Origin: Ruditapes philippinarum
Lineage: Eukaryota
Length of the DNA stretch: 64,000 bases
Direction: 5' to 3'
Assembly: GCF_026571515.1 (NCBI RefSeq)
Contig: NW_026864538.1
Span: 248,001-312,000 of the forward strand
Shown in pieces: positions 1-46,015 of the stretch. The position numbers were made by a program, and so were the translations under genes. The notes beneath the pieces are model-generated. The model had not been told where the DNA came from and made no database searches. It saw only the letters and a program-made list of their open reading frames with translations. How positions within the stretch are numbered: position 1 is the stretch's first letter; the number at the start of each line of letters is the position of its first letter.

Positions 1-387
1 AAGAATACATTCTTCAGAAAAGACTGGGAAAAATTGGATATTCCTTTTGATAGCAAGAAATTAGCCGATAAATTTCGGCTTGTAACATTACAAAGATTTC
101 AACACGAAGCAAAGATATTTCCAGGAAAGTCAAGATCCAAATATATCGCGAAAACTGCAGATATTGACTACATGTTGGTACATGAAGTTCCACGTTCTCG
201 TTGGGTGACTGTACCCACAGACGTTAGTTTATTACACCATTATCGAAATTGGGAGAACCCAAAGGACAAACTCAAGAGAGTTACTGACACAACTGTAATG
301 GAAAAGTTTAGAACATCACTTACAAAAAATGTTCAAAAAGTATGGATGGACCTTTCACACGTTAAGATGGATATACCAATAACTTAA
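1..387 (+). CDS. GT92/DUF23 glycosyltransferase copy A, 3' end of catalytic exon (5' part outside window)
   Basis: Frame 1 reads KNTFFRKDWEKLDIPF...RSKYIAKT...LVHEVP...LLHHYRNW...MDIPIT*. Near-identical to 24402-24788 of copy F. Confidence 0.9.
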   Translation, partial: KNTFFRKDWEKLDIPFDSKKLADKFRLVTLQRFQHEAKIFPGKSRSKYIAKTADIDYMLVHEVPRSRWVTVPTDVSLLHHYRNWENPKDKLKRVTDTTVMEKFRTSLTKNVQKVWMDLSHVKMDIPIT

Positions 388-2992
388 AATGATATAAATG
401 TTAAATCGAGCAAAATAACAGTTTTACAAGGGCATGCTATGACACAATAATTTCTGTTACATGTAAAATATAAGTATTTGTACGAATGAATGCATTCATA
501 GTTTAAAGGAATTCAACTGATCACTTCTAATCAACTAATATACAATCTTTTTATGTAGCTGATACGTTACGTCCTGTTTTCATTGATCAAAATTTAAGCT
601 TGTCTCTGTAGCATCAAGTATTATTTTCAACTCCACCCGTCTCCGCTTGAGCGGTGCCCTACTGCAACATTTTATTGTCATTGAATGACGCAGGCGGTAT
701 CTGGTACAGAGTATATTTTAACCTTTCAAAATAGCTATCATTACAGGTGATAAATGTCCCGCAGAAAAGTAATTTGACTCAGAATGTTCAAGAAGTTTTT
801 ATCTCAAAGAAAAATAAAGGCAGATAATTACTAAACAACATCAGTCCGAATTTTTCCTTTGTTCTTACTTACCCATTATACCCAGTACACTTCAATTAGC
901 ATTTGATAACTGTATTGATATATAGCAGTACAGTTATTTCATTGATTCATATAGTAAAAGAATCGACTGCTATATAGCGGTTGAGTTTTTTTTTCGCACC
1001 TTGTATGTATCAGCGTAGTTTTTTTTCACAGAGGCTTTATTTATTTATTTATCTATTTATTTATTTCTATTTCAAAAAAGAGAACATTATGCCATTGCAA
1101 TTAAACAGTTATAGTACATGAAACTCGTTAGTTACGAGGATATAACACTGGCTGGGTGACATCTCGAGATGTTTCTGCAAAAATTTGTCTCGGCCTTACG
1201 GTCTCGCCATTTCTTTAGTAGAAACATCCCTTGACTATTATTTATCAACGTATAGAATTTAAGTATGTAGTTTAAATACCTCACTTTTGAAAATGTCGGG
1301 AGTATTTATCAACTGATTTTAACCTTTTTCGTCGGAAACTGAAAATAAACTGGAAAAAAAACAGTAAAAGGAAACGAAAAATATTTCTGTTTTTCTTTGC
1401 TTTTTGAACTATAATGTCCATGTATTTTCGAAATTTTAGTTAATCAGCGATTGCTTGTATGATTTGATGTAACTGATAATTTTTTTCTGGTTGAGTTATT
1501 AAGACAGGAACTGCCAAAATAATGTTTTTGATTTCAAGTCTGTTTCTGGAAGAGGATTATACTGAGGAAACGATAGAAAACGACCTAAAACTCCAAATCC
1601 ATCCAAATCATAACCAAAGCTTGGCTTCCATTTTTTTTTTATATAATTATAATATACCTGCCTGTCTAAGCTGGACAAAAAATTTATTATCTTACATAGC
1701 GGCTAAAAACCGTCAATTTTAACGCCATTTTAAAAAGAAGCAAGTATTGCTTTAAGCGCAAAGATATGATGATGATGATAAAAATGTCAGTTTTCATGAT
1801 GTCTTTAAAAATTAATTATATTTACACTGACGTTTGAAGGAATCAACAGATGGTAATAATTGATGGTATACATTTGATACATTGTAAAATAGAGATCATT
1901 TTCGAATTCGGGTTCACACTACTAACTATTTACAGTGGTATGTCCCTTTTCATCTTCAGATTTTCGAGAAAAATAAGGTTTCAGATGATAACTTCTGAAT
2001 GAGTCGATGGCTTGTTATAATTATTAATATGCACTGATGTAATATCATAAAATACTCGTCAATTTTGGTTCGGACCCATAAATGTTTGCATATTGATGTC
2101 TCCTTTTTACCTGCAATTTTGCACAAAATAAGATTTTTAGATGATATTTCTTAAAGTAGTCAATTCATTGAAATTATTTTAGGTAGTTTATTGAAACATC
2201 ATAAAATACAGGTCAAGATCTGAATATCGATTAACGCCTAAATATTTTACAAAGTCATTGTTCATATTCAACTTCAGTTTAAAACAATGAACATAAACAC
2301 CTCTGACAAGTTAAAAGCACTTTTATGTACATGAATTTCATACTTTTAGAATCTAGCAGTTTTTCCAAAATGTCCTACGAAAGATACAAAATTTTGCTCA
2401 ATTTTACGTATTTTTCCGAAAGAAAATAAATCTTGTCAGAATATTAAAATAAATAGACCGAATAAATAAACATGTATAAACCGTGGACCTTGTTTCGCCT
2501 GTGTGATTATTATTCATCACCGGATCTTTAAATAGGGATTAGATTTAGGGCATTTAAAAACGAAAATGTGTCAATAAACGTTTTATCTTATCTTTATTTC
2601 ACCGTTTTGTAATTTCTCGTATATTACTTCCAGGAAATTACATTGGGAACTGGTATCCTATTTCATCGCACATAATCATTTGGCATTACATTCAGTATAT
2701 ACATAATACACACCTAGTTTCTTTCTTTACATTAGAGTTTTTACAAACATGCCGCGACCGGTCAGCAAAATCAATTTATAGCTTGTAGTAATAATATTAT
2801 TTCATTACAACTGTCCATTATTCAAACTTACCCTCAATTTAAAATCAATATGTTTTGTCACCAATATCGAGTTTCTTTTTCTTTTTATTTTTGAAAAAAT
2901 AATCCCGTAAAATCTCGCTTGATCATTGAAACATATAATTGGCACTACAGTTTACAATAACTTTTGCTATAACACGGAAGGAGAAATAAAAC

Positions 2993-4692
2993 ATGAAGGG
3001 GAAAGTTAAATATCTAATCGTTGTTCTTGTTGTGTTGCAAGGAATTTTATTATTTATCTATGTAATGTTTTATCAGAGTAGTGGTTATTCCGCCAGTGTT
3101 TCTGATGTGCATACGCCTGTCGGGAAAACAGACGTTGTTTCTAATCGTGATCAAATTAAACAATTGATACAACCAAAACTGAAATCAAAACAAGCAGGTA
3201 AAAGGAAAGATGTAGGCGTTCAAGTTCTGAATAAAACAATGTTTGTTGATGAACGCAACGACGAATGTAATGGAACCAAATTTCAGTATGAACAAGTTGA
3301 TGAGATATCCTGGTTCCCTGTAGACAAAGGGAACAGTCTGTTTGTTTTCACAGTCTATTACATTAAGGCAAGAAGAAAAGTGTTTTTATAGGCACAAAAC
3401 ATAAATCAACACCAAGGTGTGTATGTCAATTCTGGTACCCATATGGAAGTAAAGGAAATATGCGCATGACTGAACATCCGGCGCTTTCCAAAATGCGATC
3501 GGAGGGCAAAGGTAAACTGTAAGTTATCATGTAAATTAATTATTCGTTCATACCATATTTCAGTTAAAATGTCGACCATAAGTTATATATGATATTAAAC
3601 CCACACGGCTAGCGAACCTTAGATTACTAGTTTGACGCGTTATGAGTAACCACTTGGCCATGCCGCCACCACGTGGGATTCTCAGTCAATGACTTTAAGT
3701 TAAAAAATGCCACTGTCCGAAACATTTAGCCTCAAGTCTGTTTAAATGTAAAATTTCTCGTCAGAGAGGAATCAGTGTTAACAGTAATCAGATGCATAAT
3801 GATTTCCAATGTCATGTTTTACATATCAATAAGTTTCTCTTGATTTGATTCATGCCTGTAAATAAATAATGAATGTTGCTATATATGCACATTTTCGTCC
3901 TTTGCAGATATTTAGCGACAGTGTTTGAGTGTTTTCTTGGAGCAGATCAAATACCGTCTTACATCTCGCTTGTAATGAGATCATGCGAGACTCCACTAAA
4001 CATTCTTGCCGTGAAAAATGTATCAAAACCTATCAAATATAAAACGCGTTTTTCAGTATGCCTGTCTTCGCTGTATTTTAACTACAGCCGGGCGTATGAA
4101 CTTGTGGAGTGGATTGAACTGAATAGAATACTCGGTGCCGAAAAAATCACTATTGATAACATTTCGACTGCAATCAATGTCGATAAAGTGCTTGAATATT
4201 ATTCAAAACGAGGCTTGGTGGAAATTGTGCAATGGAGATTACCAATGAGAGTAAGTAAATGTCCCGGTGACCAATCGGACATTCATTACTTCGGACAAAC
4301 AGCTGCTTTAAATGACTGCCTATTTCGAACTAAGCGTGACTCGGAATATTTAGTAAACGTGGACTTAGATGAGTTCATTATTCCCCATGGTGAAAACCTG
4401 TTTAACTGAACACAAACAATAAAACCATATGAAGACATTTACAATGTTTTTATGTTTAAAAGTACATATTTTAGAAAAGAATGGAAAAGTATTAAAAATG
4501 ACTTTCCTGAACAAGATCAAGCGGAAAAGTATCAGCTGGTAACGCTTAAAGTAATATAGCGAGAAGGTAGGATATTTCCTGCAAAACGCCGAACCAAATA
4601 TATTGCACGGACAGCTTCAGTTGATGTAATACAGATTCACGAAGTTCCGGGTTCACATACGGCAATTATTCCTCCCTCTGTTGCTCTTTTAC
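2993..4692 (+). pseudogene. GT92 copy B pseudogene (exon 1 2993-3518, intron 3519-3907, exon 2 3908-~4692)
   Basis: Basic tail plus TM helix (MKGKVKYLIVVLVVLQGILLFIYV). -1 frameshift near 3378, after which the frame continues SVFIGTK...CVCQFWY...SEGKGK to a GTAAGT donor. Exon 2 has RAYELVEWIELNRILGA, IHYFGQTAALNDC and NVDLDEFIIP, then TGA at 4407-4409 (Trp in paralogues) and TAG at 4557-4559. Homology stops just before the HHYR motif. Confidence 0.88.
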
Positions 4693-4992
4693 TGAATATC
4701 TGCACACTTGCTGGTCCTGTCGTCGTGCCCTTATTAGCGGGGTCGTTTCTTGCAGAGTCTTTCTTTACAACGTTCTTCGTTCAGTGGTGGTCAACAAACG
4801 ACAATACCGCCAAAACATCATCTAACAAAAACTGCCCTTGTTGACGCCGACTTCCCGGTTACAAACGATAATTCAACCAATCATCCCTGATATTTGTGAT
4901 GATTTGACCTTGACCTGGGAATGTTTGTTACTTTCATTTACACGACCTCCCCAAGTTCCTACGTAGTTGTCTCCCTTTTCTTTGCTGCAACA
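4693..4992. mobile_element. 300-bp TG...CA insert truncating copy B, possible solo LTR
   Basis: Paralogue homology ends at ...GCTCTTTTAC|TGAATATC, and the GC-richer block ends ...GCTGCAACA. No matching TSD is visible. Confidence 0.35.
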
Positions 4993-5962
4993 GACCACTG
5001 CCATTAGAAGTGTTTTATAAAAATTTTGACAAAATTTAATAAAAAATAATTATTTTGATAGGGATATATTTTCTTGTTTATAATTGAATGATAACTAACG
5101 GCAACTAGAGTGTTTAAATTGAACAGACAAAAAATATATTATGGATGCGTTCGGTCCTATACATAACAGGTTGTTAGTAAAGCGAAAGTAGAATGTTTGC
5201 AGCAATCCACAAAGCAACGAAACGTTCTCAGTGTTACATAAAAATCGAAACTGTTTCGCCCGCGTGACATGTTGGGTATGGCGAAAGTCTACTAATAGTC
5301 TTCTTTTGGCGTAGCCTCCATTTTGAAGTAACGTGCCTCTCTTTACAGTCATGTGACATTTGTTAAGCGTAAATGGTCCCATACCGTTTTTGGATTATAG
5401 CCGAAATGGGCTCTGACTTGATAATAAGTCAAAGATGACCCTCTGAAAAAAGTTTGTGATATGGTTGAGTGTACAACTGCCTTCATGTCTATAAGTGCAA
5501 GCTCAAAATCAATTCCGTGGTTCAGAGCGTTGTTACTTCGCAAGTTCGAATCCCAGTCAATACTGTATTTTTATATGCTGCATTTGTACCTGTTACGAGC
5601 AGTTATGTACAAGGTCAGTGTAAGCTAAAGGTAATTGAACATTTATCAAATGCTGATTGCCCACATGCTTAAACTAGACATATAAAGTTACTATTTTGTT
5701 TAAAAAGTTGGATGATTATCAATAGGTCAAATAACTAAATGATAACAATTCTTTGTTTACTTTCATACTGATATTTACGATAAGTTAGATAGTTGGTTAC
5801 TAAAAATAAACTAAATTATTATCAATATGAGATATGTAAATGTTGATGTGCTTCTCTTGTACAGGACTTATATACGGATATGTTTACGCTATAATATGAA
5901 AATATGTTGATTGCTTTCAACGCTTGAATTTTAATTTAAAGAAGTCAATAAGTTATGAAGAG

Positions 5963-7709
5963 ATGAAAGACAGTGAGGCACACAATATGTCTAGTAAAAT
6001 ACGGACTAATTTGATATGGATATTAATCGTGAACATTGCTTTGGTTATTCTCTACATGTCTGTTTCTAACAAAATACATCCTTCCGATTTTGAGAAATCT
6101 TTACATCACGAAACATACAACAATAAAGGTATTATACATGAAAGCAACCAGACGGTAAACAGACGAATAAAACCCGAAACTTATCCAGATAAGGTTGTTA
6201 GCGGTGATTGTACCGGACTACTTTTTCCTGCGCATTTATCACCGGAAGTAACATGGCGTCCAGTAAACACAGAAAACTCGGCTTATGTATTCTCTATGTA
6301 TCATTTAAAGGAGAAAAGTAAACTGGTTATCATCGGAGCTAAAGTGAAAGATTATGCAACTTATTATTGTCAGATGTGGTACAGTTTGACTACAAACCGT
6401 ACTTATCACATGGTCCAAAACCCAGCTAGAGCGGCTGCTTTGCCAGAAGGCCACGGGAAAAGGTGCTTTTGACTTTTTTAACAAAAATTTTCTTTTCATC
6501 ATGCTTATATTGAAAATATTTTTAAACGTTTATATAACTTTATTGATCATATATATACGTGTGGCCTCATTTCAAAATGTATTGAACTAGTTTGAATAAT
6601 TCAGTGCTGAACCTACACTCATTCAATATCCTCTTTTTAACAATTATTTGGTATTAAAACAGACTGATTCTTATGTGTTTTTGAAAGATGTCTTACAGAA
6701 AAGTAGATTCATGTATGTAATTAATATCTTTTATATAAAATCTACATGCTTTTTTCAGGTATTCTGCATCAATATTCGAATGTCAGCTGCAATCATCTAA
6801 TCTACCAGACTATGTTTCCGTGGTCAATGAAAGTTGTGGAATTCCACTTCATATTCTAAATGTTGTCTCAACAGAAAAGAAAGTTGCTCAAAAAAGACTG
6901 TTCACAGTATGCCTGGCCCCTTTTAATTTTAATTACGATGATGATTCACAACTTATTGAATGGATAGAACTGAACAGAATTCTCGGAGCGAAAAAATTTA
7001 TAATATACGACTTTTCATCTTCCGTTAGCGTCAAGCGCGTGCTTGAATTCTACTCAAAACGAGGCTTAACGGAAGTGGTGCCGTGGCAGCTACCAATGGC
7101 GGTTGATACCTATCCAGCACAAAACATTTCGGCCGATATTCATTATTTTGGCCAGCTCGCTTCATTAAATGACTGCTTATACAGAAACAAAAACATCTCA
7201 GAATTTATTGTTAATTTAGATCTTGATGAATTTATAATCCCGCAGTCGGAGGAAATATTTACTTGGTTAGATATGTTAAAACAATTATACCAACAAGAGA
7301 GACATGCATTTTCAGCATATCTATTTAGAAACACATTCTTCTGCTTGGAATGGAATAATTCACTTATATCCACATTAAACACATCTTTTATAAAACATTA
7401 CAACTTGATTACGCTTCAAAAACTTGAACATGATAAAAATATTTTTCCAGCAAGAATAAGGTCGAAGTATTTTGCACGAACTTCTCGTGTATCAAATATA
7501 ATGATACATGATATTCTTATGATACCGTATAAACAGCATTTTGTCGTTCCTCCAACTATAGGACTTCTACATTATTACAGAAATTGTGAAGATTTATTCG
7601 TTTCTTCGAATGAAAGAAAACTCGTCACAACAGTAATGGATAGTACGGAAAAACTTTAATTCATAATGTTTTAGGTATTTGGAACGAGTTGGGGGAAAGT
7701 AATAAATAG
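5963..7709 (+). CDS. GT92 copy C (exon 1 5963/5987-6462, intron 6463-6758, exon 2 6759-7659; ancestral stop at 7707-7709 after a -1 frameshift)
   Basis: TM helix LIWILIVNIALVILYMSV; LPEGHGK-R|YSASIFEC across a phase-2 GT/AG intron; LIEWIELNRILGA, IHYFGQLASLNDC, NLDLDEFIIP, RSKYF, LLHYYRN. After GATAGTAC (~7642) the shifted frame gives YGKTLIHNVLGIWNELGESNK*, matching the C-terminal helix of the paralogues. Confidence 0.85.
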
Positions 7710-10520
7710 CAAATAATGATTATCTTCCACAGTAAAGAGTTGTCATAGAAATTATGAAATCAAGCAATGAGTGGTTAAGTATATTCAATGTTTTTATAAA
7801 CTGTTGAATACACTGAATTCGTTTGTGGCAGTATAGGTGTAGTCATGTTTGCAAGGATGGCTCGTTGCATGGTATTATTATGAAATCTTTCAATAGTAAC
7901 AATTTGTTGGTAAAATATACTTAACTTGTGAATGGTTGGCAAAAGATATGATGGCTGATAAATGCAAATCATAGTAATTCTGTATTAATGATTACAAAAT
8001 TATTTTACATGAAACAGCTAAATATTGTATATTATTAGAAAGATCTGTAAACTCATATTTTACACATTAAAAAATAAATTTTCAAAACATTTTCCATTTT
8101 CCATAGTAAAGGGTTGAACTTGGCCCTTTCCGTCAAACTTCGGACAAGAACATCAAAAATAAATTCAATAGTTTTTTGAACATCACAAAATAAATTTATG
8201 CTAAAGAGGTACATTTATTAATTATATAAATAGTGATAATATATTTTGTCGATTTTCGTCGCGCAGGTTTTCAAAACGGTAAGACGGTAGGGGGAAATCC
8301 CGGGATCCGCGACACCTAGGATCCGGGATCGTATTAAATGCATAGAGAAAACTAATAAACTACATTTGTGTTGATATTAAATTTTGTCGCAATGAAAGGC
8401 AATTAAACGTTAACTTTTTATATATCGTATGTAACGACGCGTATGTTTATTTCAATTAAAGACTTAAATATATTCTGAGCTATTTATTAACAAACATGAA
8501 ATGCGGGAATCACAATACTTGAACGAGTACTTTTATTGAATACACTGAATTTGTTTATAGCATTATACACGTGTAGAAAAATAAAAGTTTTTGTTAACAC
8601 ACAATATTTGCCTAAGTTTATGTTCATGTATATAATTGTTATTATTAGAATTTTGTAGTCAGTATAAAATTACACTAGAATTGCATTGTTTCATAAAATC
8701 ATTAAACATTGCAAAAAATCTGGAAAGAAAGTGATCCCAAGGAAGCATTAATCACAATAAAATTATAAGAGAATTGCAGACTCGGTTTGAATGAGTCTGT
8801 ACATGAGTTTGTTAATTCTTTACTTTTATTGTTTTCTTTGTTTATCTGAACTTAGTGTTATCACTTGCTTATTTCATAATGTTCACAGTTTTTTGACAAT
8901 ATTGCTTATTTTAAATATGATGTTTTATTGTGAATAAACAGTAACTAAAAATAGTGCTCCTCTTTTCTTTATACATGAACCATTAAATCATATATTTGTC
9001 CTACATTTATGATAATATAACCATTTTACTATCCGGCGACCTGACGCTTTAGCACCAAAATATCTACTTGTTTTCATTGTTTTCAGAAATAAACTCAATG
9101 CCAGCTTCTGTCGTTACGTTCTTCGTTTAAGAAATTCATTATTAACCGTTGAAAGATAACTATGGTACCTGGTCTATGTCTTTATGTATAATAAATTGTT
9201 TTGATTTTATGTACCGAATTTTAACATTACTGTAAAACATAAGTTTTTCGTATCTCACGTTAACAATATATTTATTTACATGTATATGTATAAACAAAAT
9301 GGTAAACTATGTACAAATCTATGTGTGAATAAATTATCTGTTCTGCTCTGTTTTGTTCTTGCAACAAAGTCCAGCGAAAAATGTTTTGGCAACTTTCCCC
9401 ATTTCTGTTTCGTTTCTCTAGCTGCAAGATATTGTAGGAAATGTGTTCTTTGAACCTTGCATTCTCTTCCCCCCTTGATTGCTTTATCCTCTCAAAATCA
9501 TCATCATAAAATAAGTCAATACTTAAAACTACTTGGGAAATGTCCTAATGAAAGAACTAAAACAGGTAAATTACTTGCTTGCGACGGTAATTACTTGCGA
9601 AACACGGGTATCAGATATTGACATCTGTTTGTATACTGATTGGTACAGTTACATATGAAACTGAAAGATAAATCTAGCAAACCTTAATTAAAGATGAAAA
9701 CAATTAATCTTCTATTCACGATGATGAAAGAAATGATCTATTGACTTTACAGAGAATAATTGTCTACATAATCGACCTGCAAAGATGCTTGAAACATTTA
9801 CAAGGAAAAGAAAAGTAAAAAGAGTAGTCAGCTCAACATATGTACGTGTCTACGTGCCAATGTTAATATTTGATTTTTTAGAACAAACTTAAATAAGTTT
9901 ATTTTTCATAATGTAAGCGTATAATTATCGGTAACTGCCTTTGTATAATCCTAATAAAATCCGGAAACACATAGATACCTATGATACAGGTTCGACCTCA
10001 AACCGGAAATGGCGTACATGTATCACTTAGTAAAATATTGAAAGTTCATGATAACGATATTTTGCAGTGTTTCTCGGAATAAAATTTGCATTTACTACAT
10101 ATCAGGATGAACTTAAGAAAATTCTGGCTGTAACCTATTGTTATATTTTGTAGGAATAAGTACTTTCAGACGTTCAGAAGATCAAGGAAACAAAATTTGC
10201 ATATCTCATTGTACCGGCTAAGTCCTCTGTCTAAGATGTCTATAATTATTCCACCGGACTACGGTCAAACTGCATGTGTTTATGTGTTTTATAAGCAAGT
10301 ATTTAGTTGTTAAACTTTTATTTTTAGATACAAAAAAACAACAACAATATACATGTACTAACAGTCTAGGGATCAAATCATTCATATATAATATATTTTA
10401 TATACATTCTGGAAGCATATACATGGATCATTCTCTAATAATTATTATCATAAAACTTAAACGAGATGCGTTTATGAACGTCATTTTCACTATCCCTCCA
10501 TTTAAAGTAAAAGCAATTCA

Positions 10521-12998: not shown

Positions 12999-13434
12999 AA
13001 GAGTGTTTGATATTACTGTTTTGTTTCATGAATTCCTTCAAAATGTAGCACTACGAGTATTATTATCCTTATACAAACAATGCATTATTTGTTTTAATAC
13101 GCATGGTACAAAATAAAAGAACAATAGTTCAATTCAATTATAGTAATTTTATCACATTATAACAGTTGAAGATACATGTAGTTAAACACACATTTAAAGA
13201 ATAACATTAATTGACATATACCCTTAATTGACATTCGTGACGCTTTTTTTTAATAGGTTAACACGTAATAATATTTCGTTTAAACATAATATATTTCGTA
13301 AAAATGTAATGATATTTCGTAAAAACGAAGTAACATTTCGTCAAAAAAAGGCAATTTTACTACGTTAATCCTTATTCTGACATAGTACCTGCGAAAGCTC
13401 TGCTTCAAAAGTGTCCTCGTGCCTCTGCAGATGT

Positions 13435-13690
13435 TAATAGATAGAGCGTTGGACTGTAAAACGGGGGACCCGGGTTCGATTCAAGGGCGGTGAAAGTTAC
13501 TTTCGTTGTGATTGATCATGAACTCCTTTCTACAGTAATTCGCACTTTACGTCTACTCTGGCTTGTACAGAAGTTATCAGTTCCTTGCAAAAGTGAAGCC
13601 AAGTAGTATTGCTAAACTGCTTGACAGCCTGTCCAGAAACGATTTGATGACTGAAGTGGGCACTAGCGCATTCAAAGTGGCTAACTTTTG
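13435..13690 (+). mobile_element. tRNA-derived SINE
   Basis: tRNA-like head (ATAGAGCGTTGGACTGTAAA...GGGTTCGATTC, B-box) followed by the core GATTGATCATGAA...TTCTACAGTAATTC, which I recall as typical of mollusc SINEs. Confidence 0.6.
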
Positions 13691-19454: not shown

Positions 19455-19585
19455 CTATAGCTCGTTCTCTTCTCTTGTATTGAAGCTATTAACAGCTCAT
19501 TTATCTTTACAGAGACAAACTGATACTACGGGGACATATTCCCTGCCTCTTGTTCTAGAACAATTTTGTTTGTCATTTTACAACA

Positions 19586-19588
<3 letters not shown>

Positions 19589-19669: not shown

Positions 19670-19670
<1 letters not shown>

Positions 19671-37779: not shown

Positions 37780-38150
37780 ATAGTTAACCTTACACTTCGA
37801 GTTAACATTTAACTTTAAGTGAACATTTGACTTCGAATTAACATTTGTCTATGAGTAAGCATTTTACTCCGAGTAAACAATTTGCCTTTGAATGAACATT
37901 ACACTTCGAGTGAACATTTGATTTCGAGTGAAAATTTCGATCCCAGTAAACATTTGTCTGTGAGTAAACTGTTGACATATCAATGCACTTCGAGTGAACA
38001 CTTAATTTGGACTGAATATTTGTTTTCGGGTGAACTTCAAGTAAATTTTTGACTTTGAATGGACATTAGTTTTTTAGCGAACAATTGACTTTGGGCATTT
38101 GAATTTGAGTGAACACTTGACTTCAAATTGATATATGACAGTGAACACTT
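37780..38150. repeat. Degenerate 18-bp minisatellite (consensus ~TTCGAGTGAACATTTGAC) downstream of copy G
   Basis: About 20 units visible. Remnants also flank the mariner at 35420-35470 and 37100-37135. Confidence 0.85.
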
Positions 38151-38402
38151 GGCATTGTTCATGATTAAATGTACACATTTATAGACAAATTTGTATTGAT
38201 GTAACGAAACATTAACAACACCATGAGTGTTGAGATACGTTTAAAACTGAAATAAGATTTGACCATAATTTGATCTCAGTCAAATGACGTCTACACGTAA
38301 AAGGCTTATTAACAAATGTTAAACTCTAACTTGGAAATAAGTTTCAACACTAACATATTTGGATTAGAAGAAAAATCAATTATTGATTCACAAATATTGT
38401 TT

Positions 38403-40085
38403 TCAAATTGGCATATCCAGTTTTACATTTCCTAGCCTTTCCCAGCGCTTCTGGACTCTGTGGATTAGTTTTTCTCCATATTTAATTAACACGGTCTTGT
38501 CAACTATTCTTCTCGAAGTATCTTTATAATTCTGCCAGTTTCTGTAATGGTGAAGTAGACCTAATTCTACAGGTACTATGTATGAACGACTTCCCGATAC
38601 CTCGTGAATCATCAAACTTTTGTCTTCTTTGATCGTCCTTGTAAAATACTTTGACCTTGACCAAGCAGGAAAAATGACATCTTCACGTTCAAAATATTGT
38701 AACGATATGATATTAAACTTTTGAGAAATATGCTTATTTTGAAACTCAGTAATATAACTGTTCCATTCTTTTCTGAAAAAAGTATTGCGGAAAATATAAG
38801 TATCATATTCCGACGGAATCTGTGTAAAGAGTTCAGACCATGTATAAGTATTATCAGAGCGTGGTATTATAAACTCATCTACATCACAATTGATAAGGAA
38901 CTCTGAATGCGCTCTGTTTCGATACAGACAGTCCTGAAGCATTGGTATCGTTCCCATAGAATGAATTTCTACAGGAGCTGATGTTTTCGGCCATGTGTAA
39001 CTCTTAATCGGTAAATCCCATTGTACAACTTCTACGATGTCTTCTTCAACATAATTGCTGAGCACTTGATCAATGTTCATTGCGATAGAGTAATTGTATA
39101 CAACAATCTTTTCTGCTCCAAGCATCTTGTTAAATTCTATCCACTCAACGAGTTCGTAAGCTCTACCATACCGGAAATGCAGCGGTCTCAAACAGACCGT
39201 GAACTTCCGTTGATACTTTTGTGGTACTATTCCATTTTTCACTTTCAGTAGATGAAGTGGCACCTTACATTGACTTGTAACCAATGAAATGTAATGAGTA
39301 TTGGTAGGTATACCAGGGCAAATAAATATAGCACCTGAGTATCTGAAATAAATATAAAAATCAGTGTATGACATGTATGATATTGGAAATGTCAAAGTAT
39401 TGTCTCTGAAGTTTTAATTTTTATTGGATAAGTGAGTGACTGTATCAATATGTAAGTGAATGAATAAATAAATGAATAAGTGAATAAATAAATAAATGAC
39501 TGAATGAATGAATGAATGAATGAATGAATAAATGAACGAACGAAAAAACGAACGAATGAATGAATAAACGAACGAATGAATGAATGAAGCTTACTTTTCC
39601 CCATGGCTCTCAGGAAGGACGTGTATATTTGCAGGTTTTTCATGCATTATAATTGTATCATTCGCCGGCATTACAAACCAGTACTGGCAAAATATTTTCG
39701 CTATCCTAAAAGTGCTTGCACCAACCACTTTGATTGTACCACTTTGATCAACAATGTATGCAGAAAACACAAACGCATTCTTCTTTTCATCCACTGCTCT
39801 CCATGATTCTTCATTCAGTAACTCGACCGGGTACATGATATTTACGCAATCACCATTTGTCACGTGCATTTCTTTCATTAGTTGTTTTGTTTGTAATGTG
39901 TGAATTTGATTGACCTGTTTCGTTATTTCCGATGACTGTGTCTGTGGGAGAAAGATGTCCGGACTCTTTGAATATAAACTGCGTTTTGGAAGCGAATCTT
40001 TAGAGCTTGATAACATATGATAACATATTAACAGAGTCTGTACTCCTAGAAATACTATCACTGTTCTACGGTATTTGATCCTCAT
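38403..40085 (-). CDS. GT92 copy G, intact (exon 1 40085-39595, intron 39594-39343, exon 2 39342-38403; 476 aa)
   Basis: MRIKYRR plus TM helix; LPESHGE-K|YSGAIFIC across a phase-2 GTAAG/CAG intron; VCLRPL, RAYELVEWIEFNKMLGA, IHSMGTIPMLQDC, NCDVDEFIIP, RSKY, LLHHYRNW. Confidence 0.92.
39430..39590. repeat. Imperfect (GAAT/AAAT/GAAC)n tetranucleotide microsatellite in the intron of copy G
   Basis: Seen directly. Confidence 0.9.
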
Positions 40086-41559
40086 CGTGTTTAAAAATTT
40101 AATCGATTCTATGTACTTTTTTTAAATCAATCTAAAAATGTAGACATATATACAAAAAGCACTGGTATTTTTTATTTAATATCCTGAAGTTTGCTTAAAA
40201 CATGCTTGCAAAAAGGAATTAGTTTATACAAAAAATTCCGTCATTATAAAATGTCTACATATGAATTCTTCTAAATATTACAGTCCTAATCATGGACTAA
40301 TAAACACAATTTTACGTATTAACCTAATGACAACTTCGAATGACAATAAGCTTAAATCCAGCAAAATCGATTTTTATCATTTTATTATATTTATTTCTAA
40401 TTAAAGCACAATATGTTACACACGCTATTACACACGCTGTTAGGAACATCTTGCTAGTAAACTGAAATGGAAAATATATAGATAACACAAAATTGATAGA
40501 TTAGGTAAAATAAAAAAAAACATTTATTATTGTGATATGTACGACTATGAATATTTGAATAACAGTAAGAAATATGGCGGACACAAAATATTTTCACTAC
40601 TCCTTAACGAGCATCATCGGATACCCATTGTTGATTAACATGTTACATGAGGGAGAAGTTTAAGTATAACAATAAAAACCCTACAGGTTTGCTCTCTTTA
40701 ATTTCTTATAAGATGAAAAATATCTTTAAAAGAATAAATAATGTTGTTAATAAGACATCTCTGTCACCAATGTAAAGAGTTATTCTTTTAAATCTCTAGT
40801 GTGTGTTTTTTTATTATGTAAAGAATATGAAAAATGAATGACCACCTGACTTCCAGAAAACCCATCTTAATTTCAAATCCAATGGTCCGACTGACCACCT
40901 GCTATACAAGTTAATGTCGAGATCGAGACATGTATTGGATCATGATACATATATATCATCATTTACTATTGTAGTTATTCATATCAATGTTGACAGTATT
41001 ATGTATCCATAAAACAATGACTAAGCTCGAAAATAATAAAATAGCCAGTTTAAAATTGGGTCATGAGAAATGTTTTCCTTTGAAAGAAAATGTGATATTT
41101 TGAAGCAAATCTATATGCGAATAATGTAAGTTTAAGGTGTAAAAATCTATACAAACATGTTTAAGAGATGAATAAAAAGAATGAAAATAAAAATATATCT
41201 TTAAAAATATATTTTTTAAACTTCGGATATCAATAAAATTAACAAAGAATATGCTTATTACTTTATTGCACAATAATGAAAGTGGTTTTATTGAAAAAAA
41301 AATTAAAACGTATCACACGGAGCAAAGGTTGCAATATTTGTATCATATAAAGCATGGTGATATGTACAAAAATGTATTTACATTTCTATCTTAAATAAAA
41401 CAATACATAGTGATATCTTGCATTGCTTACTTGATCAGGCTAATTACTTTACAATGAATTATAAATTTATAACGTTTGCATCTTTGAATGATGGTAATAA
41501 ATTGATCAAGTCGGTCGATGCAATTGCAAATTAAAACAAATACTTTCCTTATAACTATC

Positions 41560-41740
41560 GACACTATCCAGCAAACTTAAGGAATAATGGTAGTTCTACT
41601 TAGGTGCCCCGCCATCTCCGGCCTGGGATATTACAAAAAGGCACATGAGGTATTCCCTTACCAGTAAAGCTTGCGAGTCGCCGTATGACTTGCAGTGTGA
41701 GTGTGACTTAAAATCCACCAAAAAAATAAATAACAAATGA
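41560..41740 (+). mobile_element. SINE fragment (MetaSINE-like core); related copy at 47537-47700
   Basis: CTATCCAGC...GGTAGTTCTAC.TAGGTGCCC...GTAAAGCTTG.GAGTCGCCGTATGAC...GTGTGACTTAAA. The 47.6-kb copy has GAGGAAGCTACCCAG and an (AAAC)n tail. Confidence 0.5.
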
Positions 41741-41769
41741 TATAACTTTTATTATTGTAATCTATGTAA

Positions 41770-42010
41770 TTATTTTGTTGTTGCTGTTGTTGTTGTTGTT
41801 CTGGTTGATGATGACGACGACGATGATGATGATGATCAGAAGGACAGTGCTTATTACTATCGTTATGAAAATGACAATGATGCAAGTCATAATGATGATG
41901 ATGTTCACCTGGATGAAATTAAGTTGTTGATTAATTAAGGTGATGATGAAGAGTAGAAGAACGCTGATTTCGATAATGATGACGGTGATGTACATATTGG
42001 TTATAAATAT
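41770..42010. repeat. (GTT)n/(GAT)n low-complexity tract; paralogous tract at 47200-47345
   Basis: Seen directly. It produces spurious poly-Q/H/D ORFs. Confidence 0.85.
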
Positions 42011-42939
42011 CATGGTTGTCCAGGGACATAGTTTTGACTATAATTATGTTCAAGACAAATTCTACAAAGGTTTGTCAAGTTATTTGTTGTTGTAGGTTTT
42101 TTTATTCCTCCGACGGGAGCTTTCACATGGACGTGTCGGCATATACATGTACTAAGAAACAAGTAATTTGACTATAAATTGCAGGTACATAAATAAGGTT
42201 TTGTTGTTGTAGGTTTTTTTTATTTCTTAATTGAAATTAACGATTAATATGACATAACAAAATGTAGAGAGTAAAATATATAGTCCAATTTGAGGATGTG
42301 AATGATAAAAGTGTCATTGCAAGTGTATCAGGATCTATTTCATTTTTCTTATTAAAACTTTGTCATATTTGTCACATAATCTTTGTCACATGAATCATGA
42401 AATGCAAACATTGATAGCAATATAAGATACCCAAAATTTACGACTTCATAAACTTAACGCAAAAAAAACACACTGGCAGAAACATTAGTTATCAGAAGAA
42501 CTGTAGGACATCTTCAGAGTTATTAGAAAAACTCTAGGACTTTTGAAAAATCGGGCATAGATTTGTTAACTGGGTCTCTATGCTTGTTACTTTCCATTAT
42601 AATTAGATAATTAAGTATTGCAAGGAAGATAACAAATTAACAGGTCAATATGAACGAATGAGCAACTCCATCCTCCGAATAACAATTCATTTACCGCGTC
42701 ATTGGAAATTCGGGGATATTTCGGCATGTACGTGAACAAACTAGAGATAATCGTTAATGATAGGGAATCGGGAAGGTGAACACAGTTGTCTACCTTGATT
42801 ACATAAATGAAATGCATGGAATTGTTTAAATCATTTACATTAAATTAGATTTTTGTATACTCATTATCGATTCCCTTATTTCCTTTTCAAAAGAAAACAT
42901 TTTAAATAATTTTATTTTTAGATTCGATGTGTCAAGTTT

Positions 42940-43160
42940 TTCAGGGTAGGCGGCATGTTTGAGTGGTAAAGTCGTCCCGTCGGTCTTGTACTTTGAGGAT
43001 TGTTGGTACCCCGTTAGGGTCAAGTCGTTGTTTCCGTGAGCAAGAAACTTTACACTAATTGCTTAGTACTGGTTGGTTCCAGAGACAGATTCGAGGCTGT
43101 TTCAATAAGCTTATACCTTCCAACACAATTGAATTAAAATAATTCGACTAAACAAATGGT
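42940..43160 (+). mobile_element. CORE-type SINE fragment
   Basis: GTTGTTTCCGTGAGCAAGAAACTTTACACTAATTGCTTAGTACTGGTTGGTTCCAG resembles the CORE-SINE central domain and is preceded by a decayed tRNA-like head. Confidence 0.6.
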
Positions 43161-43699
43161 TGCAAAAAGTACGTTTCATTTTACAAAATGTGTCTTTGGC
43201 TAATATAACGCAAAAAGAAAAATATAATAACACCAATTGATACCACACTAATGTGGTTTATTTACACAAAACTACCAGCGGCTAATAAGAATAATATCGA
43301 ACATTGTGATGATCTAATGTTCTTTTTTATGGATCTTTTAAAAGTTAAACATTTCAGCTACTTATTAATTAATTGTACCAGTATGTACACGTATTTACAA
43401 TATTCTAGTCAACCAAGAAACCAATCAGCGATTGCTTTCAAGATTTAATGTACCTGTTGAATTTTCTGGTTGGGTGAGTAAGATAGGATTTGAATAATTC
43501 AACAGCCAAGTTTATGTTTTTGATTTCATGTATGTTTCCGGAACGGAAGAGAAACAAGGTTTCATACACTTTTCACTGAAACATTCTGAATATCCAATTA
43601 CAAGATATTATGCACAAGATTCGCATATTTCGTTCTTTGCTGAATTAATTAATCAAATACCGAGACGTCCAGATTAAATCATCCTAGTTTCAATACAGT

Positions 43700-44040
43700 A
43701 CAGGTGAACATTTGGCTTTGGCTTAACAATTGACTTAACTGACTTGAAGTGAAAATTTGCCTTTGAGTTAACATAACACTTCGTCTTAACATTTGATTTC
43801 GAGTTAACATTTAACTTTGAGTGAACATTTGACTCCGAGTGAACATTTGTCTATGAGCAAATATTTGACTTTAACATTTCACATCAAGTGAAGTCTTGAC
43901 TTGGAGTGAACAATTGATTTCGAGTGAACATTTGTCTTCAAGTGAACTTTTTACTTCGAGTGAACATTTGTTTTCGAACGAACATCTGCCTTCGACCATT
44001 TGACTTTGCGTGAACACTTGACTTGAAGTGAAGGAACACA
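43700..44040. repeat. 18-bp minisatellite downstream of copy H (paralogue of 37780-38150)
   Basis: Units ~TTCGAGTGAACATTTGAC. These cause the 6-aa periodicity in ORF 43871-44128. Confidence 0.85.
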
Positions 44041-44290
44041 TGGCATTGAATATTATCAAAGTAAGCATTTGAATACAACAAATTCTGAAACGTTGCAGAG
44101 ATGTAACATCAACATGATATAAAACCATGAATGTTAAGATAAGTTTATAACTGGAATACGACTTGACCGAAATTCGATTTTATTCAAATGACATGTATAT
44201 AATTGTATAATGCTCATTAACAATTCTTAATCAATAACTGGAAAAAACTTTCAACACTGTCATATTCGGACTGCTTCACCAAAATTGTTT

Positions 44291-46015
44291 TTAAACTGGC
44301 ATATCCAGTTTTACATTTCCTAGCTTTTCCCAGCGCTTCTGGACTCTGTGGATTAGTTTTTCTCCATATTTAATTAACACGGTCTTGTCAACTATTCTTC
44401 TCGATGTATCTTTATAATTTTGCCAGTTTCTGTAATGGTGAAGTAGACCTAATTCTACAGGTACTATGTACGAACGACTTCCCGATACCTCGTGAATCAT
44501 CAAACTGTTGTCTTCTTTGATTGTCCTTGTAAAATACTTTGACCTTGACCTAGCAGGAAATATGACATCTTCATGTTCAAAATATTGTAACGATATGATA
44601 TTAAACTTTTGAGCAATGATTTTATTTCGAAACTGATTTATATAACTGTTCCATTCTTTTCTGAAAAATGTATTGCGGAAAATATAAGTATCATATTCCG
44701 ACGGGAGCTGTGTAAAGAGTTCAGACCATGTAGAAGCATTATCAGAGTGTGGTATTATAAACTCATCTACATCAACATTGATTACGAACTCTGAATGCGC
44801 TCTGTTTCGATACAGACAGTCCTGAAGCATTGGTATCATTCCGATAGAATGAATGTCCACAGGATCTGACGTTTTCGGCCATGTGTAACTCTTAATCGGT
44901 AAATCCCATTGTACAACTTCTACGATGTCTTCTTCAACATAATTGTTGAGCACTTGATCAGTGTTCATTGCGATAGAGTAATTGTATACAACGATCTTTT
45001 CTGCTCCAAGCATCTTGTTAAATTCTATCCACTCAACGAGTTCGTAAGCTCTACCATACCGGAAATGCAACGGTTTCAAACAGACCGTGAACTTCCGTTG
45101 ATATTTTTGTGGTGCTCTTCCATTCTTCACCTTAAGTAGATGAAGAGGCACCTTACATTGACTTGTTACCAATGAAATATAATGAGTATTGGAAGGTACA
45201 CCAGGGCAAATAAATACAGAACCTGAGTATCTGAAATAAATATTAAAAACAGTACATGATAAAAGAAATGTTAAAGTATTGTCTCTGTAGTTATAATTTT
45301 NNNNNNNNNNNNNNNNNNNNNNNNNNNNNNNNNNNNNNNNNNNNNNNNNNNNNNNNNNNNNNNNNNNNNNNNNNNNNNNNNNNNNNNNNNNNNNNNNNNN
45401 NNNNNNNNNNNNNNNNNNNNNNNNNNNNNNNNNNNNNNNNNNNNNNNNNNNNNNNNNNNNNNNNNNNNNNNNNNNNNNNNNNNNNNNNNNNNNNNNNNNN
45501 NNNNNNNNNNNNNNNNNNNNNNNNNNNNNNNNNNNNNNNTGGCTCTCAGGAAGGACGTGTATATTTGCAGGTTTTTCATGCATTATAATTGTATCATTCG
45601 CCGGCATTAAATGCCAGTATTGGCAAAATATTTTCGCTATACTACGAGTGCTTGCACCGACCACTTTAATTTTACCACTTTGTTCAACAATATATGCAGA
45701 AAACACAAACGCATTCTTCTTTTCGTCTACTCTTCTCCATGATTCTTCTTTCAGTAACTCGGCCGGGTACATGATATTAATGCAATCACCATTTGTCACG
45801 TGCATTTCTTTCATTAATTGTAATGTGTTTGTTTGATTAACATTTTTCGTCATTTTGGAAGACTGTGACTGTGGGAGAAATATATCCAGACTCTTTGAAT
45901 TTAAATTCATGCGTTTGACAAGCGAATCTTCAGAGCTTAATAACATATGATAGCATATCAACATAGTCTGTACTCCTAGAATTACTATCACTGTTTGACG
46001 GTATTTGATCCTCAT
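44291..46015 (-). CDS. GT92 copy H, probably intact (exon 1 46015 into the N gap; exon 2 45230-44291)
   Basis: About 90% identical to copy G in exon 2; VCLKPL, IHSIGMIPMLQDC, NVDVDEFIIP, LLHHYRNW. Acceptor TTTCAG|A at 45231/45230. The donor lies in the gap. Confidence 0.88.
   Translation of the reverse strand: MRIKYRQTVIVILGVQTMLICYHMLLSSEDSLVKRMNLNSKSLDIFLPQSQSSKMTKNVNQTNTLQLMKEMHVTNGDCINIMYPAELLKEESWRRVDEKKNAFVFSAYIVEQSGKIKVVGASTRSIAKIFCQYWHLMPANDTIIMHEKPANIHVLPESXXXXXXXXXXXXXXXXXXXXXXXXXXXXXXXXXXXXXXXXXXXXXXXXXXXXXXXXXXXXXXXXXXXXXXXXXXXXXXXXXNYNYRDNTLTFLLSCTVFNIYFRYSGSVFICPGVPSNTHYISLVTSQCKVPLHLLKVKNGRAPQKYQRKFTVCLKPLHFRYGRAYELVEWIEFNKMLGAEKIVVYNYSIAMNTDQVLNNYVEEDIVEVVQWDLPIKSYTWPKTSDPVDIHSIGMIPMLQDCLYRNRAHSEFVINVDVDEFIIPHSDNASTWSELFTQLPSEYDTYIFRNTFFRKEWNSYINQFRNKIIAQKFNIISLQYFEHEDVIFPARSRSKYFTRTIKEDNSLMIHEVSGSRSYIVPVELGLLHHYRNWQNYKDTSRRIVDKTVLIKYGEKLIHRVQKRWEKLGNVKLDMPV
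45301..45539. other. Assembly gap
   Basis: Run of N at the position of the intronic microsatellite seen in copy G. Confidence 0.99.

What the first reader, a model, noticed from the sequence alone, without database searches (positions are those of the whole stretch)
1..46015. Eight-gene birth-and-death cluster of GT92 (galt-1-like) glycosyltransferases: a candidate glycan-diversification locus
Seen: at least 8 paralogues in 46 kb in both orientations (+,+,+,-,-,+,-,-), with the same phase-2 intron wherever both exons are visible. They range from near-identical pairs (A/F, G/H) to deeply diverged copies, and include intact, frameshifted and dead members. Established: C. elegans GALT-1 (GT92) adds beta-1,4-Gal to core alpha-1,6-fucose; this Gal-Fuc epitope occurs on mollusc N-glycans and is the target of the fungal galectin CGL2 in nematodes. 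Plant GT92s (GALS) build beta-1,4-galactan. Inference: turnover like that of immune gene families suggests the locus varies surface or mucus glycans under pathogen/lectin pressure, or builds galactan-like polymers.
Basis: partly seen in the sequence, partly recalled or inferred. Interest (0 to 1): 0.8.

Follow-up and report, generated by a model that had tools for sequence, protein, structure and literature searches.

The report
Clam GT92 glycosyltransferase tandem gene cluster
Eight neighbouring copies of one sugar-adding enzyme gene in a clam genome are real and belong to a larger 15-copy array built by repeated block duplication; it is a tidy but ordinary gene-family expansion whose biological role is untested.

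Summary
The window carries eight GT92 (PF01697) genes in the stated order and orientation. All share one phase-2 intron, which RNA contigs confirm for copy C. The genome is almost certainly the RefSeq Manila clam (Ruditapes philippinarum), where most copies are already annotated as uncharacterised LOC genes.

New here:
- The eight copies are the right end of a 15-copy, about 114-kb array, plus one relic.
- The array is a tandem triplication of a five-gene unit, followed by a local G/H duplication.
- B is dead: one frameshift, two stop codons and a lost 3' end. D has two 1-nt deletions and C has one near its C-terminus. E, F and G read intact.
- H is interrupted by the assembly gap at the exon 1/intron boundary. 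The 574-aa ORF across the gap is an artefact.
- Five of the six subtypes have Mercenaria orthologues, with independent duplications in each lineage.
- Recent duplicates show dN/dS of 0.17-0.66.

So "birth and death" is supported as a pattern. An immune-like arms race and any glycan function remain untested. The G/H subtype replaces a glutamine that is invariant in 55 of 55 other sequences compared. The scan had noted the G/H motif before (s1-804040).

The parts
1..387 (+). Copy A: last 128 codons and stop of exon 2 of a gene that starts upstream of the window (contig copy 8, block II, F-type)
   Evidence: It is 91% identical in protein to F. The full gene (contig 244.5-248.4 kb) has open frames in both exons.
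2993..4692 (+). Copy B (B-type), pseudogene: exon 1 2993-3518, intron 3519-3907, exon 2 3908 to about 4692
   Evidence: It has a 1-nt deletion at about 3386, TGA at 4407 and TAG at 4557, and the last 47 codons have no homology. No RNA contig lies on it in 3 RNA-type runs.
5963..7659 (+). Copy C (C-type): exon 1 5963-6462, intron 6463-6758, exon 2 6759-7659
   Evidence: identical to RefSeq model P0034; spliced RNA contigs; 1-nt deletion at 7642 shortens the C-terminus; His to Tyr in the HHYR motif.
10521..12998 (-). Copy D (D-type), frameshifted: exon 1 12998-12385, exon 2 11467-10521
   Evidence: Exon 2 has two 1-nt deletions (about 11292 and about 10791). Exon 1 is open.
16205..19454 (-). Copy E (E-type), intact: exon 1 19454-18931, intron 18930-17154, exon 2 17153-16205
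   Evidence: Structure model of exon 2: pLDDT 82.3, best fold match GalS1 8d3t.
21333..24788 (+). Copy F (F-type), intact: exon 1 21333-21922, intron 21923-23851, exon 2 23852-24788
38403..40085 (-). Copy G (G/H-type), intact: exon 1 40085-39595, intron 39594-39343, exon 2 39342-38403
   Evidence: identical to RefSeq model P0055; altered HYFGQ motif.
44291..46015 (-). Copy H (G/H-type): exon 1 46015 down to 45540, where it runs into gap 45301-45539; 3' part of the intron 45300-45231; exon 2 45230-44291
   Evidence: The end of exon 1 and the donor site are unread. Exon 2 is open.
1708..24921 (.). Block III of the tandemly triplicated five-gene unit (B, C, D, E, F)
   Evidence: It is collinear with contig 180.1-211.0 kb (block I) at 85-94% DNA identity, and with 212.8-248.7 kb (block II).
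37895..46371 (.). Local G/H duplication: segments 37895-40468 and 43788-46371
   Evidence: DNA identity is 76-88% over exons, intron and flanks.

Best explanation
The locus is the right-hand part of a large tandem array of Golgi-type (type II membrane) GT92 glycosyltransferase genes in the Manila clam.

Shown:
- Six old subtypes (B, C, D, E, F and G/H types; 38-52% protein identity) share a two-exon structure with one phase-2 intron.
- A five-gene unit [B+, C+, D-, E-, F+] was duplicated in tandem into three blocks. These differ by about 6-20% in DNA.
- G/H was duplicated locally.
- Some copies then decayed: B, D, upstream copy 5, and the B- and C-type genes of block II.
- The remaining copies stay under purifying selection.

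Inferred:
- The intact copies are inverting, metal-dependent GT-A enzymes that add a sugar, probably galactose, to glycans in the secretory pathway.
- The old subtypes differ in acceptor or donor specificity.
- The recent block copies mostly add dosage or redundancy.
For: Family membership:
- PF01697 matches at E down to 4.3e-43.
- The conserved Cys residues and the D-x-D-E motif are kept in C, E, F, G, H and A.
- The model of E exon 2 (pLDDT 82.3, pTM 0.81) is closest to poplar GalS1 8d3t, with Foldseek E 4.3e-13 and TM 0.63.
- A single N-terminal hydrophobic 19-mer (Kyte-Doolittle 1.75-2.82) follows a 7-11-residue N-terminus holding 1-5 Lys/Arg in 13 of 13 exon-1 frames.

Array structure:
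- 15 of the 59 genome-wide PF01697 matches lie on this contig between 181.5 and 293.1 kb.
- Copy positions come, block collinearity, and a C-type relic in block II.

Orthology (careful IQ-TREE, 59 rows), given as ultrafast bootstrap / SH-aLRT:
- C-type with Mercenaria P0014: 100/98.
- D-type with P0015: 100/95.
- E-type with P0004/5/6: 100/98.
- B-type with P0092: 100/99.
- F-type with P0017/20: 95/80.
- Duplications occurred separately in each species.

Selection and expression:
- dN/dS is 0.17-0.39 (exon 2) and 0.29-0.66 (exon 1), with dS 0.075-0.225, over 7 intact pairs.
- C is transcribed and spliced as predicted.
- Seven copies are identical to RefSeq protein models.
Against: - No enzymatic, glycomic or tissue data exist for any copy.
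- Expression was examined only for B and C, and only from contigs, which cannot show absence.
- The 1-nt deletions in C and D were not verified by independent reads. The apparent differences in the DNA run proved to be paralogue cross-mapping. They could therefore be assembly errors, although they sit in runs of at most 2 nt.
- G/H has no Mercenaria partner.
- Pairwise dN/dS averages can hide positively selected sites.
Confidence: 0.8

Rival explanations
1. Immune-like glycan-diversification locus. Copy number and sequence of these GT92 genes are driven by pathogens, viruses or lectins that bind the glycans they make, as shown for several GT92 genes in nematodes.
For: - The locus shows gains, losses and pseudogenes, and copy number per subtype differs between Ruditapes (2-3) and Mercenaria (1-3).
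- In Caenorhabditis, GT92 genes galt-1, bah-1, srf-2 and gtnt-1 affect lectin, bacterial and viral susceptibility (passages of PMC13105082; PMC2727005).
- The G/H clade changes a motif that is otherwise invariant.
Against: - Subtypes are stable orthogroups across two venerid genera.
- Pairwise dN/dS is below 1 in 16 of 16 comparisons.
- The young copies came from a few block events.
- There is no population, infection or glycan evidence for any bivalve GT92 here or in the papers found.
Confidence: 0.15
2. Pathway cassette. The five old subtypes act in successive steps on one glycan or polymer, and the cassette is kept and duplicated as a unit because the genes work together.
For: - The five-gene order and orientation are preserved in blocks I and III, and partly in block II.
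- All five types have orthologues on one Mercenaria chromosome-scale record.
- Plant GT92 enzymes are processive galactan synthases (names; passages).
Against: - Collinearity of recent duplicates is expected from segmental duplication alone.
- Members of each block have decayed independently (B, D, copy 5), so the unit is not maintained intact.
- There is no co-expression or biochemical evidence.
- Mercenaria gene order was not examined.
Confidence: 0.12
3. Assembly artefact. The near-duplicate copies are two haplotypes of one locus placed in tandem by the assembler.
For: - Bivalve genomes are highly heterozygous (recalled, from no call).
- Elsewhere in this assembly, pairs of GT92 hits have near-equal scores on different contigs.
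- One gap lies inside the array.
Against: - The D-, E- and F-types each have three diverged versions on one contig, more than two haplotypes can give.
- Blocks differ by 6-20% in DNA and carry different lesions.
- No copy of E or G at 97% or above exists elsewhere in the assembly.
- An independent DNA run holds both B-specific and copy-1-specific contigs, and both C-specific and copy-2-like contigs.
Confidence: 0.04
4. Decaying array. Most copies are non-functional relics of a past expansion.
For: - Among the 8 window copies, B, D and C carry frame-breaking changes, and H cannot be judged.
- C has a unique His to Tyr change in the HHYR motif.
- No RNA contigs lie on B.
Against: - E, F and G, and upstream copies 1, 2, 3, 4, 6 and 7, keep open frames and splice sites.
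- dN/dS is well below 1.
- C is transcribed and spliced.
- Pseudogene-versus-partner dN/dS of 0.17-0.22 in exon 2 points to recent inactivation.
Confidence: 0.05

Closest known systems
RefSeq annotation of Ruditapes philippinarum (LOC132725993, 132725994, 132726000, 132726001, 132726005, 132726006 and a 'GT92 protein F13G3.3-like' model)
   Same: These models are 99.7-100% identical to copies 1, 4, 6, H, G, C and 7 on a contig of the same length, 448,805 bp. The genes are therefore already in a public annotation.
   Different: They are annotated one by one as 'uncharacterized protein'. The block-triplication architecture, the pseudogenes B and D, and the orthology with Mercenaria are not part of that annotation. 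Among the proteins returned, I saw no 100% model for E, F, A, B or D.
Mercenaria mercenaria GT92 genes (LOC123550291, 123550293, 123550295, 123550296, 123549585, 123549587, 123550658, 128557981) on one 91.3-Mb record
   Same: They are orthologous to the B-, C-, D-, E- and F-types with strong support, and they too form a multi-copy family on one chromosome.
   Different: Copy numbers per type differ: the E-type has 3 and the F-type 2 in Mercenaria, by its own duplications. No G/H-type partner was found.
Caenorhabditis elegans GT92/DUF23 family (61 predicted proteins; GALT-1, BAH-1, SRF-2, GTNT-1)
   Same: Both are large lineage-specific expansions of the same Pfam family, with N-terminal membrane anchors, conserved cysteines and an acidic motif (passages of PMC2727005; PMC13105082).
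   Different: The nematode genes have genetic and, for GALT-1, biochemical evidence (core alpha1,6-Fuc beta1,4-galactosyltransferase). The clam genes have none. One-to-one relation to GALT-1 was not tested.
Plant galactan synthase GalS1 (PDB 8d3t, 8d3z)
   Same: It is the only solved relative. The profile match covers the motif region through the D-x-D-E (E 0.0021), and it is the best fold match (E 4.3e-13, TM 0.63).
   Different: Sequence identity is 14-16%. GalS1 has an extra domain and makes a plant cell-wall polymer. The clam proteins are shorter and have an unrelated stem region.

Membership tests
GT92 (Pfam PF01697, Glyco_transf_92 / DUF23) | Profile match above the curated cut-off (23 bits) | tested here: met
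   7 of 8 window exon-2 ORFs score 102.9-148.1 bits. The in-window tail of A scores 20.3 bits, but the whole A exon 2 scores 133.2 bits.
GT92 (Pfam PF01697, Glyco_transf_92 / DUF23) | Conserved cysteines and the acidic (D-x-D-E) motif, named as the family's hallmark in PMC2727005 (passages) | tested here: met
   C8, C29, C58 and C146, and D161, D163 and E164 (numbering of E exon 2), are present in A, C, E, F, G and H.
GT92 (Pfam PF01697, Glyco_transf_92 / DUF23) | GT-A fold like the one solved GT92 structure | tested here: met
   The E exon-2 model has pLDDT 82.3. The top four Foldseek hits are GalS1 chains (E 4.3e-13 to 1.2e-11), followed by generic GT-A enzymes. Only E was modelled.
GT92 (Pfam PF01697, Glyco_transf_92 / DUF23) | Type II membrane topology (short N-terminal tail, one signal-anchor) | tested here: met
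   Hydropathy maximum is 1.75-2.82 at residues 8-30 in 13 of 13 exon-1 frames. This is a simple scale, not a dedicated predictor.
GALT-1-type core alpha1,6-fucoside beta1,4-galactosyltransferase | UDP-Gal donor and core-fucose acceptor activity | not testable with these tools
   This needs recombinant enzyme assays. The 'galt-1-like' names are automatic database labels.
GALT-1-type core alpha1,6-fucoside beta1,4-galactosyltransferase | Orthology to C. elegans GALT-1 rather than to other GT92 clades | not tested
Birth-and-death multigene family | Tandem duplicates of different ages, with pseudogenes | tested here: met
   Old types are 38-52% identical in protein. Block copies have dS 0.075-0.225. 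B, D and copy 5 are disabled, and one relic remains.
Birth-and-death multigene family | Paralogues group by type across species (no concerted evolution), with species-specific gains or losses | tested here: met
   Careful tree: 5 of 6 types pair with Mercenaria genes, and duplications are separate in each lineage.
Immune-type rapidly diversifying family | Excess of amino-acid change (dN/dS above 1), at least at some sites | tested here: inconclusive
   Pairwise dN/dS is 0.17-0.66 in 16 of 16 comparisons. One pseudogene pair reaches 1.01 in exon 1. Site models were not run.

The most novel reading that the evidence does not exclude
The G/H-type genes, together with two unnamed transcripts and a third copy on another contig, form a neo-functionalised GT92 subfamily. 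In them a glutamine conserved from plants to molluscs in the HYFGQ motif next to the catalytic D-x-D-E is replaced. This would give a new donor or acceptor specificity. On this reading the triplicated five-gene cassette plus G/H is a copy-number-variable module that tunes clam surface or mucus glycans against pathogens.
Probability: 0.12. Interest if true: 0.6.

Novelty: new member of a known kind. Interest (0 to 1): 0.33.

Why it matters
If the intact copies are active, this one contig holds 15 of the 37 strongest GT92 loci of the Manila clam genome (E of 1.8e-26 or lower). That makes it the main place to look for the enzymes behind mollusc-specific glycan features such as galactosylated core fucose.

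GT92 genes decide susceptibility to lectins, bacteria and a virus in nematodes. A farmed clam that suffers from Perkinsus and Vibrio disease (recalled, from no call) is a reasonable place to ask whether the same holds.

As it stands, the finding is a well-resolved example of segmental duplication followed by decay, not a new mechanism.

Tried and rejected
1. Polymorphic lesions. The DNA run X12 seemed to show that the TGA at 4407 in B and the 1-nt deletion at 7642 in C are polymorphic. I compared each variant with the upstream paralogues. The five differences on B 4171-4465 are exactly the five that separate copy 1 from B. The later differences listed on C (7155 to 7609) all carry the copy-2 letter, while three of the earlier ones in exon 2 do not. 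These contigs are therefore cross-mapped paralogues, and the idea was dropped. The frame-restoring inserted base near 7641 fits copy 2 as well.

2. Solved relatives by single sequence. The PDB search with E exon 2 alone found nothing. A 17-row profile found GalS1 only weakly, at E 0.0021.

4. Homopolymer errors as the cause of the 1-nt deletions. The contexts are runs of at most 2 nt. This is neither confirmed nor excluded.

5. Literature. Five searches found no paper that links a bivalve GT92 expansion or this cluster to function.
- One search returned 1 paper, a snail genome study with one mention of GT92.
- In one search, none of the 15 listed of 340 papers joins a clam name with a GT92 term.
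- Supplementary tables of bivalve genome papers were not opened and may list the family.

6. Other ORFs in the window. Of 7 scanned, 6 gave no Pfam family and 1 was a transposase remnant.

7. Rows left out of the trees:
- The Ruditapes database models that equal my own copies (P0001, P0002, P0018, P0034, P0047, P0050, P0055).
- Isoforms (P0090, P0099, P0101, P0117).
- P0120 and most unnamed proteins.
- Tegillarca P0115, dropped only.
- The pseudogenes B, D and copy 5.

Full report
WHAT THE WINDOW IS. The window is G000:C13025:248001-312000, on a contig of 448,805 bp in a 1.41-Gb assembly of 15,874 contigs. The best protein hits to copy E are Ruditapes philippinarum RefSeq models that sit on a contig of that same length. 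Seven such models match the contig at 99.7-100%. I therefore take the organism to be the Manila clam and the assembly to be the annotated RefSeq one. This is an inference from those matches.

THE OBSERVATION. tblastn with the window's own exons finds eight exon-2 homologues and, for the seven copies whose 5' part lies in the window, an exon-1 homologue. Order and orientation are A+, B+, C+, D-, E-, F+, G-, H-. PF01697 (Glyco_transf_92) matches the exon-2 ORFs of B to H at E 1.5e-29 to 4.3e-43. The 117-residue tail of A alone is below the cut-off at 20.3 bits, but the whole A exon 2 scores 133 bits. Two exon-1 ORFs (D and F) were scanned and neither gave a credible Pfam family.

All copies share one intron position. 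Exon 1 ends two bases into a codon just after a P-E-G-H-G-like motif. A GT donor follows, and after the AG acceptor one base completes the codon before a Tyr or Phe codon. This was read at both sites in B, C, D, E, F and G, and at the acceptor only in H.

For C the predicted intron 6463-6758 is removed in contigs of two RNA-type runs. In X15, one 342-nt contig has 231 and 111 nt on the two sides and no mismatch. In X19 the junction carries an allele-like two-letter difference. C and its paralogue, copy 2, differ at 10 and 2 positions in those two stretches, so the X15 contig comes from C itself.

THE ASSEMBLY GAP, CHECKED AS ASKED. Gap 45301-45539 lies inside H. Its flanks align to G on the same strand and in the same order: G 39604-40121 with H 45540-46051, and G 37895-39421 with H 43788-45300. 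The unread part therefore corresponds to G 39603-39422. That is 182 nt against 239 N written, made up of the last 9 nt of exon 1, the donor site and 173 nt of intron. The 574-aa ORF that the ORF listing reports across the gap is N translated as X and has no meaning. Both exon frames of H are open outside the gap.

STATE OF THE COPIES. I compared each suspect copy with its closest intact paralogue.
- B has a 1-nt deletion in exon 1 (about 3386), TGG to TGA at 4407 and GAG to TAG at 4557. It loses homology after about 4692, so the last 47 codons are gone. B is dead, and no RNA contig lies on it in the three RNA-type runs, although contigs cannot prove absence.
- D has two 1-nt deletions in exon 2 (about 11292 and about 10791).
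- C has one 1-nt deletion at 7642 that replaces about the last 20 residues, and a unique His to Tyr change in the HHYR motif. C is nevertheless expressed.
- E, F and G read intact.

The deletions sit in runs of at most two identical bases, so they are not classic homopolymer errors, but no independent read confirms them. I first thought a DNA run (X12) showed the TGA in B and the deletion in C to be polymorphic. A position-by-position check showed that those contigs carry the letters of the upstream paralogues, copies 1 and 2. This is cross-mapping at the 95% threshold, not polymorphism.

BEYOND THE WINDOW. The genome has 59 PF01697 matches, 37 of them at E of 1.8e-26 or lower. Fifteen of these lie on this contig between 181.5 and 293.1 kb. 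I fetched 148-248 kb and 312-322 kb and mapped 15 copies plus one 62-residue C-type relic at 213,913-214,098. No copies lie outside 180.6-294.0 kb within the 174 kb examined.

Self-alignment shows three collinear blocks:
- Block I, 180.1-211.0 kb: copies 1, 2, 3, 4, 5.
- Block II, 212.8-248.7 kb: the relic, then copies 6, 7 and 8, where copy 8 is A.
- Block III, 249.7-272.9 kb: B, C, D, E, F.

Blocks I and III are 85-94% identical in DNA. Comparisons with block II give 78-90%. The unit is [B-type +, C-type +, D-type -, E-type -, F-type +]. This explains why A and F are the closest pair in the window: they are the F-type genes of blocks II and III.

G and H are a separate local duplication at 85.7-88.1%. 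A third G-type copy lies on contig C304 at 88%. Upstream copy 5 has two nonsense changes. In total, after the triplication at least B, D and copy 5 were disabled, and the B- and C-type genes of block II were largely deleted.

ARTEFACT OR REAL. Three diverged versions of the D-, E- and F-types on one contig cannot come from two haplotypes. The blocks differ by 6-20% and carry different lesions. No copy of E or G at 97% or above exists elsewhere in the assembly. An independent DNA run contains both B-specific and copy-1-specific contigs, and both C-specific and copy-2-like contigs. Read depth was not available because all runs were held as contigs. A small doubt remains.

EVOLUTION. A careful IQ-TREE analysis of 59 rows was run: 12 exon-2 translations of my own, 38 named database proteins and 9 unnamed ones. 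The quick trees agree with it. Each of five types pairs with Mercenaria mercenaria genes (ultrafast bootstrap / SH-aLRT):
- C-type with P0014: 100/98.
- D-type with P0015: 100/95.
- E-type with P0004, P0005 and P0006: 100/98.
- B-type with P0092: 100/99.
- F-type with P0017 and P0020: 95/80.

The Mercenaria E-type triplet and F-type pair are its own duplications. All these Mercenaria genes lie on one 91.3-Mb record; their order could not be checked.

G and H sit on a long branch (0.40) with two unnamed transcripts, P0061 and P0067 (100/98), and no Mercenaria partner. A separate search with G found 78 proteins at E of 1e-10 or lower among 249 candidates, and the best outside Ruditapes was 50-55% identical.

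Nei-Gojobori estimates for seven intact pairs give the following:
- dN/dS of 0.17-0.39 in exon 2.
- dN/dS of 0.29-0.66 in exon 1.
- dS of 0.075-0.225.

Disabled copies against their partners give dN/dS of 0.17-0.22 (B, D) and 0.38-0.41 (copy 5) in exon 2, and 1.01 for copy 5 exon 1. This suggests recent inactivation. The pattern is gain by block duplication and loss by decay, on top of old, stable subtypes under purifying selection. It is birth and death in the formal sense, but slow and conservative compared with immune receptor families.

WHAT THE PROTEINS ARE. Thirteen of 13 exon-1 frames have one hydrophobic 19-mer at residues 8-30 after a 7-11-residue N-terminus holding 1-5 Lys/Arg, as in Golgi type II glycosyltransferases. 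The conserved cysteines and the D-x-D-E motif are intact in A, C, E, F, G and H. PMC2727005 calls these the hallmark of the DUF23 domain (passages). A model of E exon 2 (17-row alignment, pLDDT 82.3, pTM 0.81) matches poplar galactan synthase GalS1 best (8d3t, E 4.3e-13, TM 0.63), followed by generic GT-A enzymes. By sequence, GalS1 is the only solved relative, at profile E 0.0021; a single-sequence search found nothing.

Membership in GT92 is therefore secure. Activity is not. That GALT-1 galactosylates core alpha1,6-fucose, that this 'GalFuc' occurs in squid, keyhole limpet, planaria and nematodes, and that galt-1 mutants resist the lectin CGL2 is stated in passages of PMC6935376 and PMC13105082. 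An oyster N-glycome paper could not resolve whether its core Fuc-Hex is Gal-Fuc (PMC10301044, passage). Nothing links any bivalve GT92 gene to a glycan.

THE G/H SUBTYPE. I looked at columns where at least 90% of the 55 other sequences agree. G and H differ from them at five such columns. Three of these lie in the H-Y-F-G-Q motif, about 20 residues before the D-x-D-E: Tyr to Ser, Phe to Met or Ile, and Gln to Thr or Met. The Gln is invariant in 55 of 55 others, and P0061 and P0067 share the changes. The motif aligns with Y-Y-Y-N-Q of GalS1, so the Gln is conserved to plants. Because the rest of the catalytic signature is kept and the changes are shared within a clade, altered specificity is more likely than decay. 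This is inference.

LITERATURE. Five searches found no paper on a bivalve GT92 expansion or on this cluster. C. elegans has 61 predicted DUF23 proteins (PMC2727005, abstract and passages), so large GT92 families are known. A razor-clam study lists a 'galt-1' transcript as down-regulated after domoic-acid exposure (PMC12031274, passages). Supplements were not opened.

VERDICT. The finding is a new, already annotated member of a known kind of thing, namely a lineage-specific tandem expansion of a glycosyltransferase family. Its points of interest are the clean three-block architecture, the share of the genome's GT92 genes it holds, and the divergent G/H subtype.

Noticed in passing
window 17516-18245 (intron of E): A repeat of about 730 nt with more than 40 copies at 82-87% identity on many contigs of this genome. 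It is probably a transposable element inserted in the intron, and part of it is repeated within the intron (17430-17692 vs 18068-18335, 88.5%).
   Followed up: partly
window 6464-6787 (intron of C): Contig depth jumps to 1,320-1,722 in the DNA run and 12-192 in the RNA-type runs. A very high-copy short repeat sits in this intron.
   Followed up: no
window 29788-33437: A 1.6-kb unit is duplicated in tandem (93.6% identity). Each copy carries a 117-aa ORF on the minus strand (31436-31789, 33021-33374). One of the two was scanned and gave no Pfam family.
   Followed up: partly
window 35678-36311 (-): Remnant of a mariner/DDE transposase (PF01359, E 8.9e-07), split over two overlapping ORFs.
   Followed up: partly
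window 48060-48557 and 49374-49772: Two arrays of a 22-nt unit in opposite orientation, about 800 nt apart (an inverted pair of minisatellites). Further satellites lie at 55929-56903 (179 nt), 58611-59413 (165 nt) and 63270-64000 (164 nt, 96% matches, running off the window).
   Followed up: no
window 47345-47536: A second assembly gap (192 N), outside the finding. It follows an acidic low-complexity ORF.
   Followed up: no
G000:C304:51268-52971: A third G/H-type GT92 gene, 88% identical to G over its whole 1,683 nt, on another contig. C2856 and C11069 have open frames of the same 346-aa length as C304 in the Pfam scan.
   Followed up: partly
window 6230-7196 (C) in runs X19 and X12: Some contigs are mosaics: mostly C-like, but with patches carrying the letters of upstream copy 2, including the codon at the splice junction. 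This could be gene conversion between blocks, divergent alleles or chimeric contigs.
   Followed up: partly
contig C13025 about 247.9 kb (copy A, upstream of the window; L010): Copy A reads Pro where the other copies have the His of the E-I-H-Y-F-G-Q motif. Its frames are otherwise open.
   Followed up: no
contig C13025 227152-233091 (L009, L004): A block of tandem and inverted repeats (80-90% identity) sits inside block II, where the B- and C-type genes are missing. It may mark the rearrangement that removed them.
   Followed up: no
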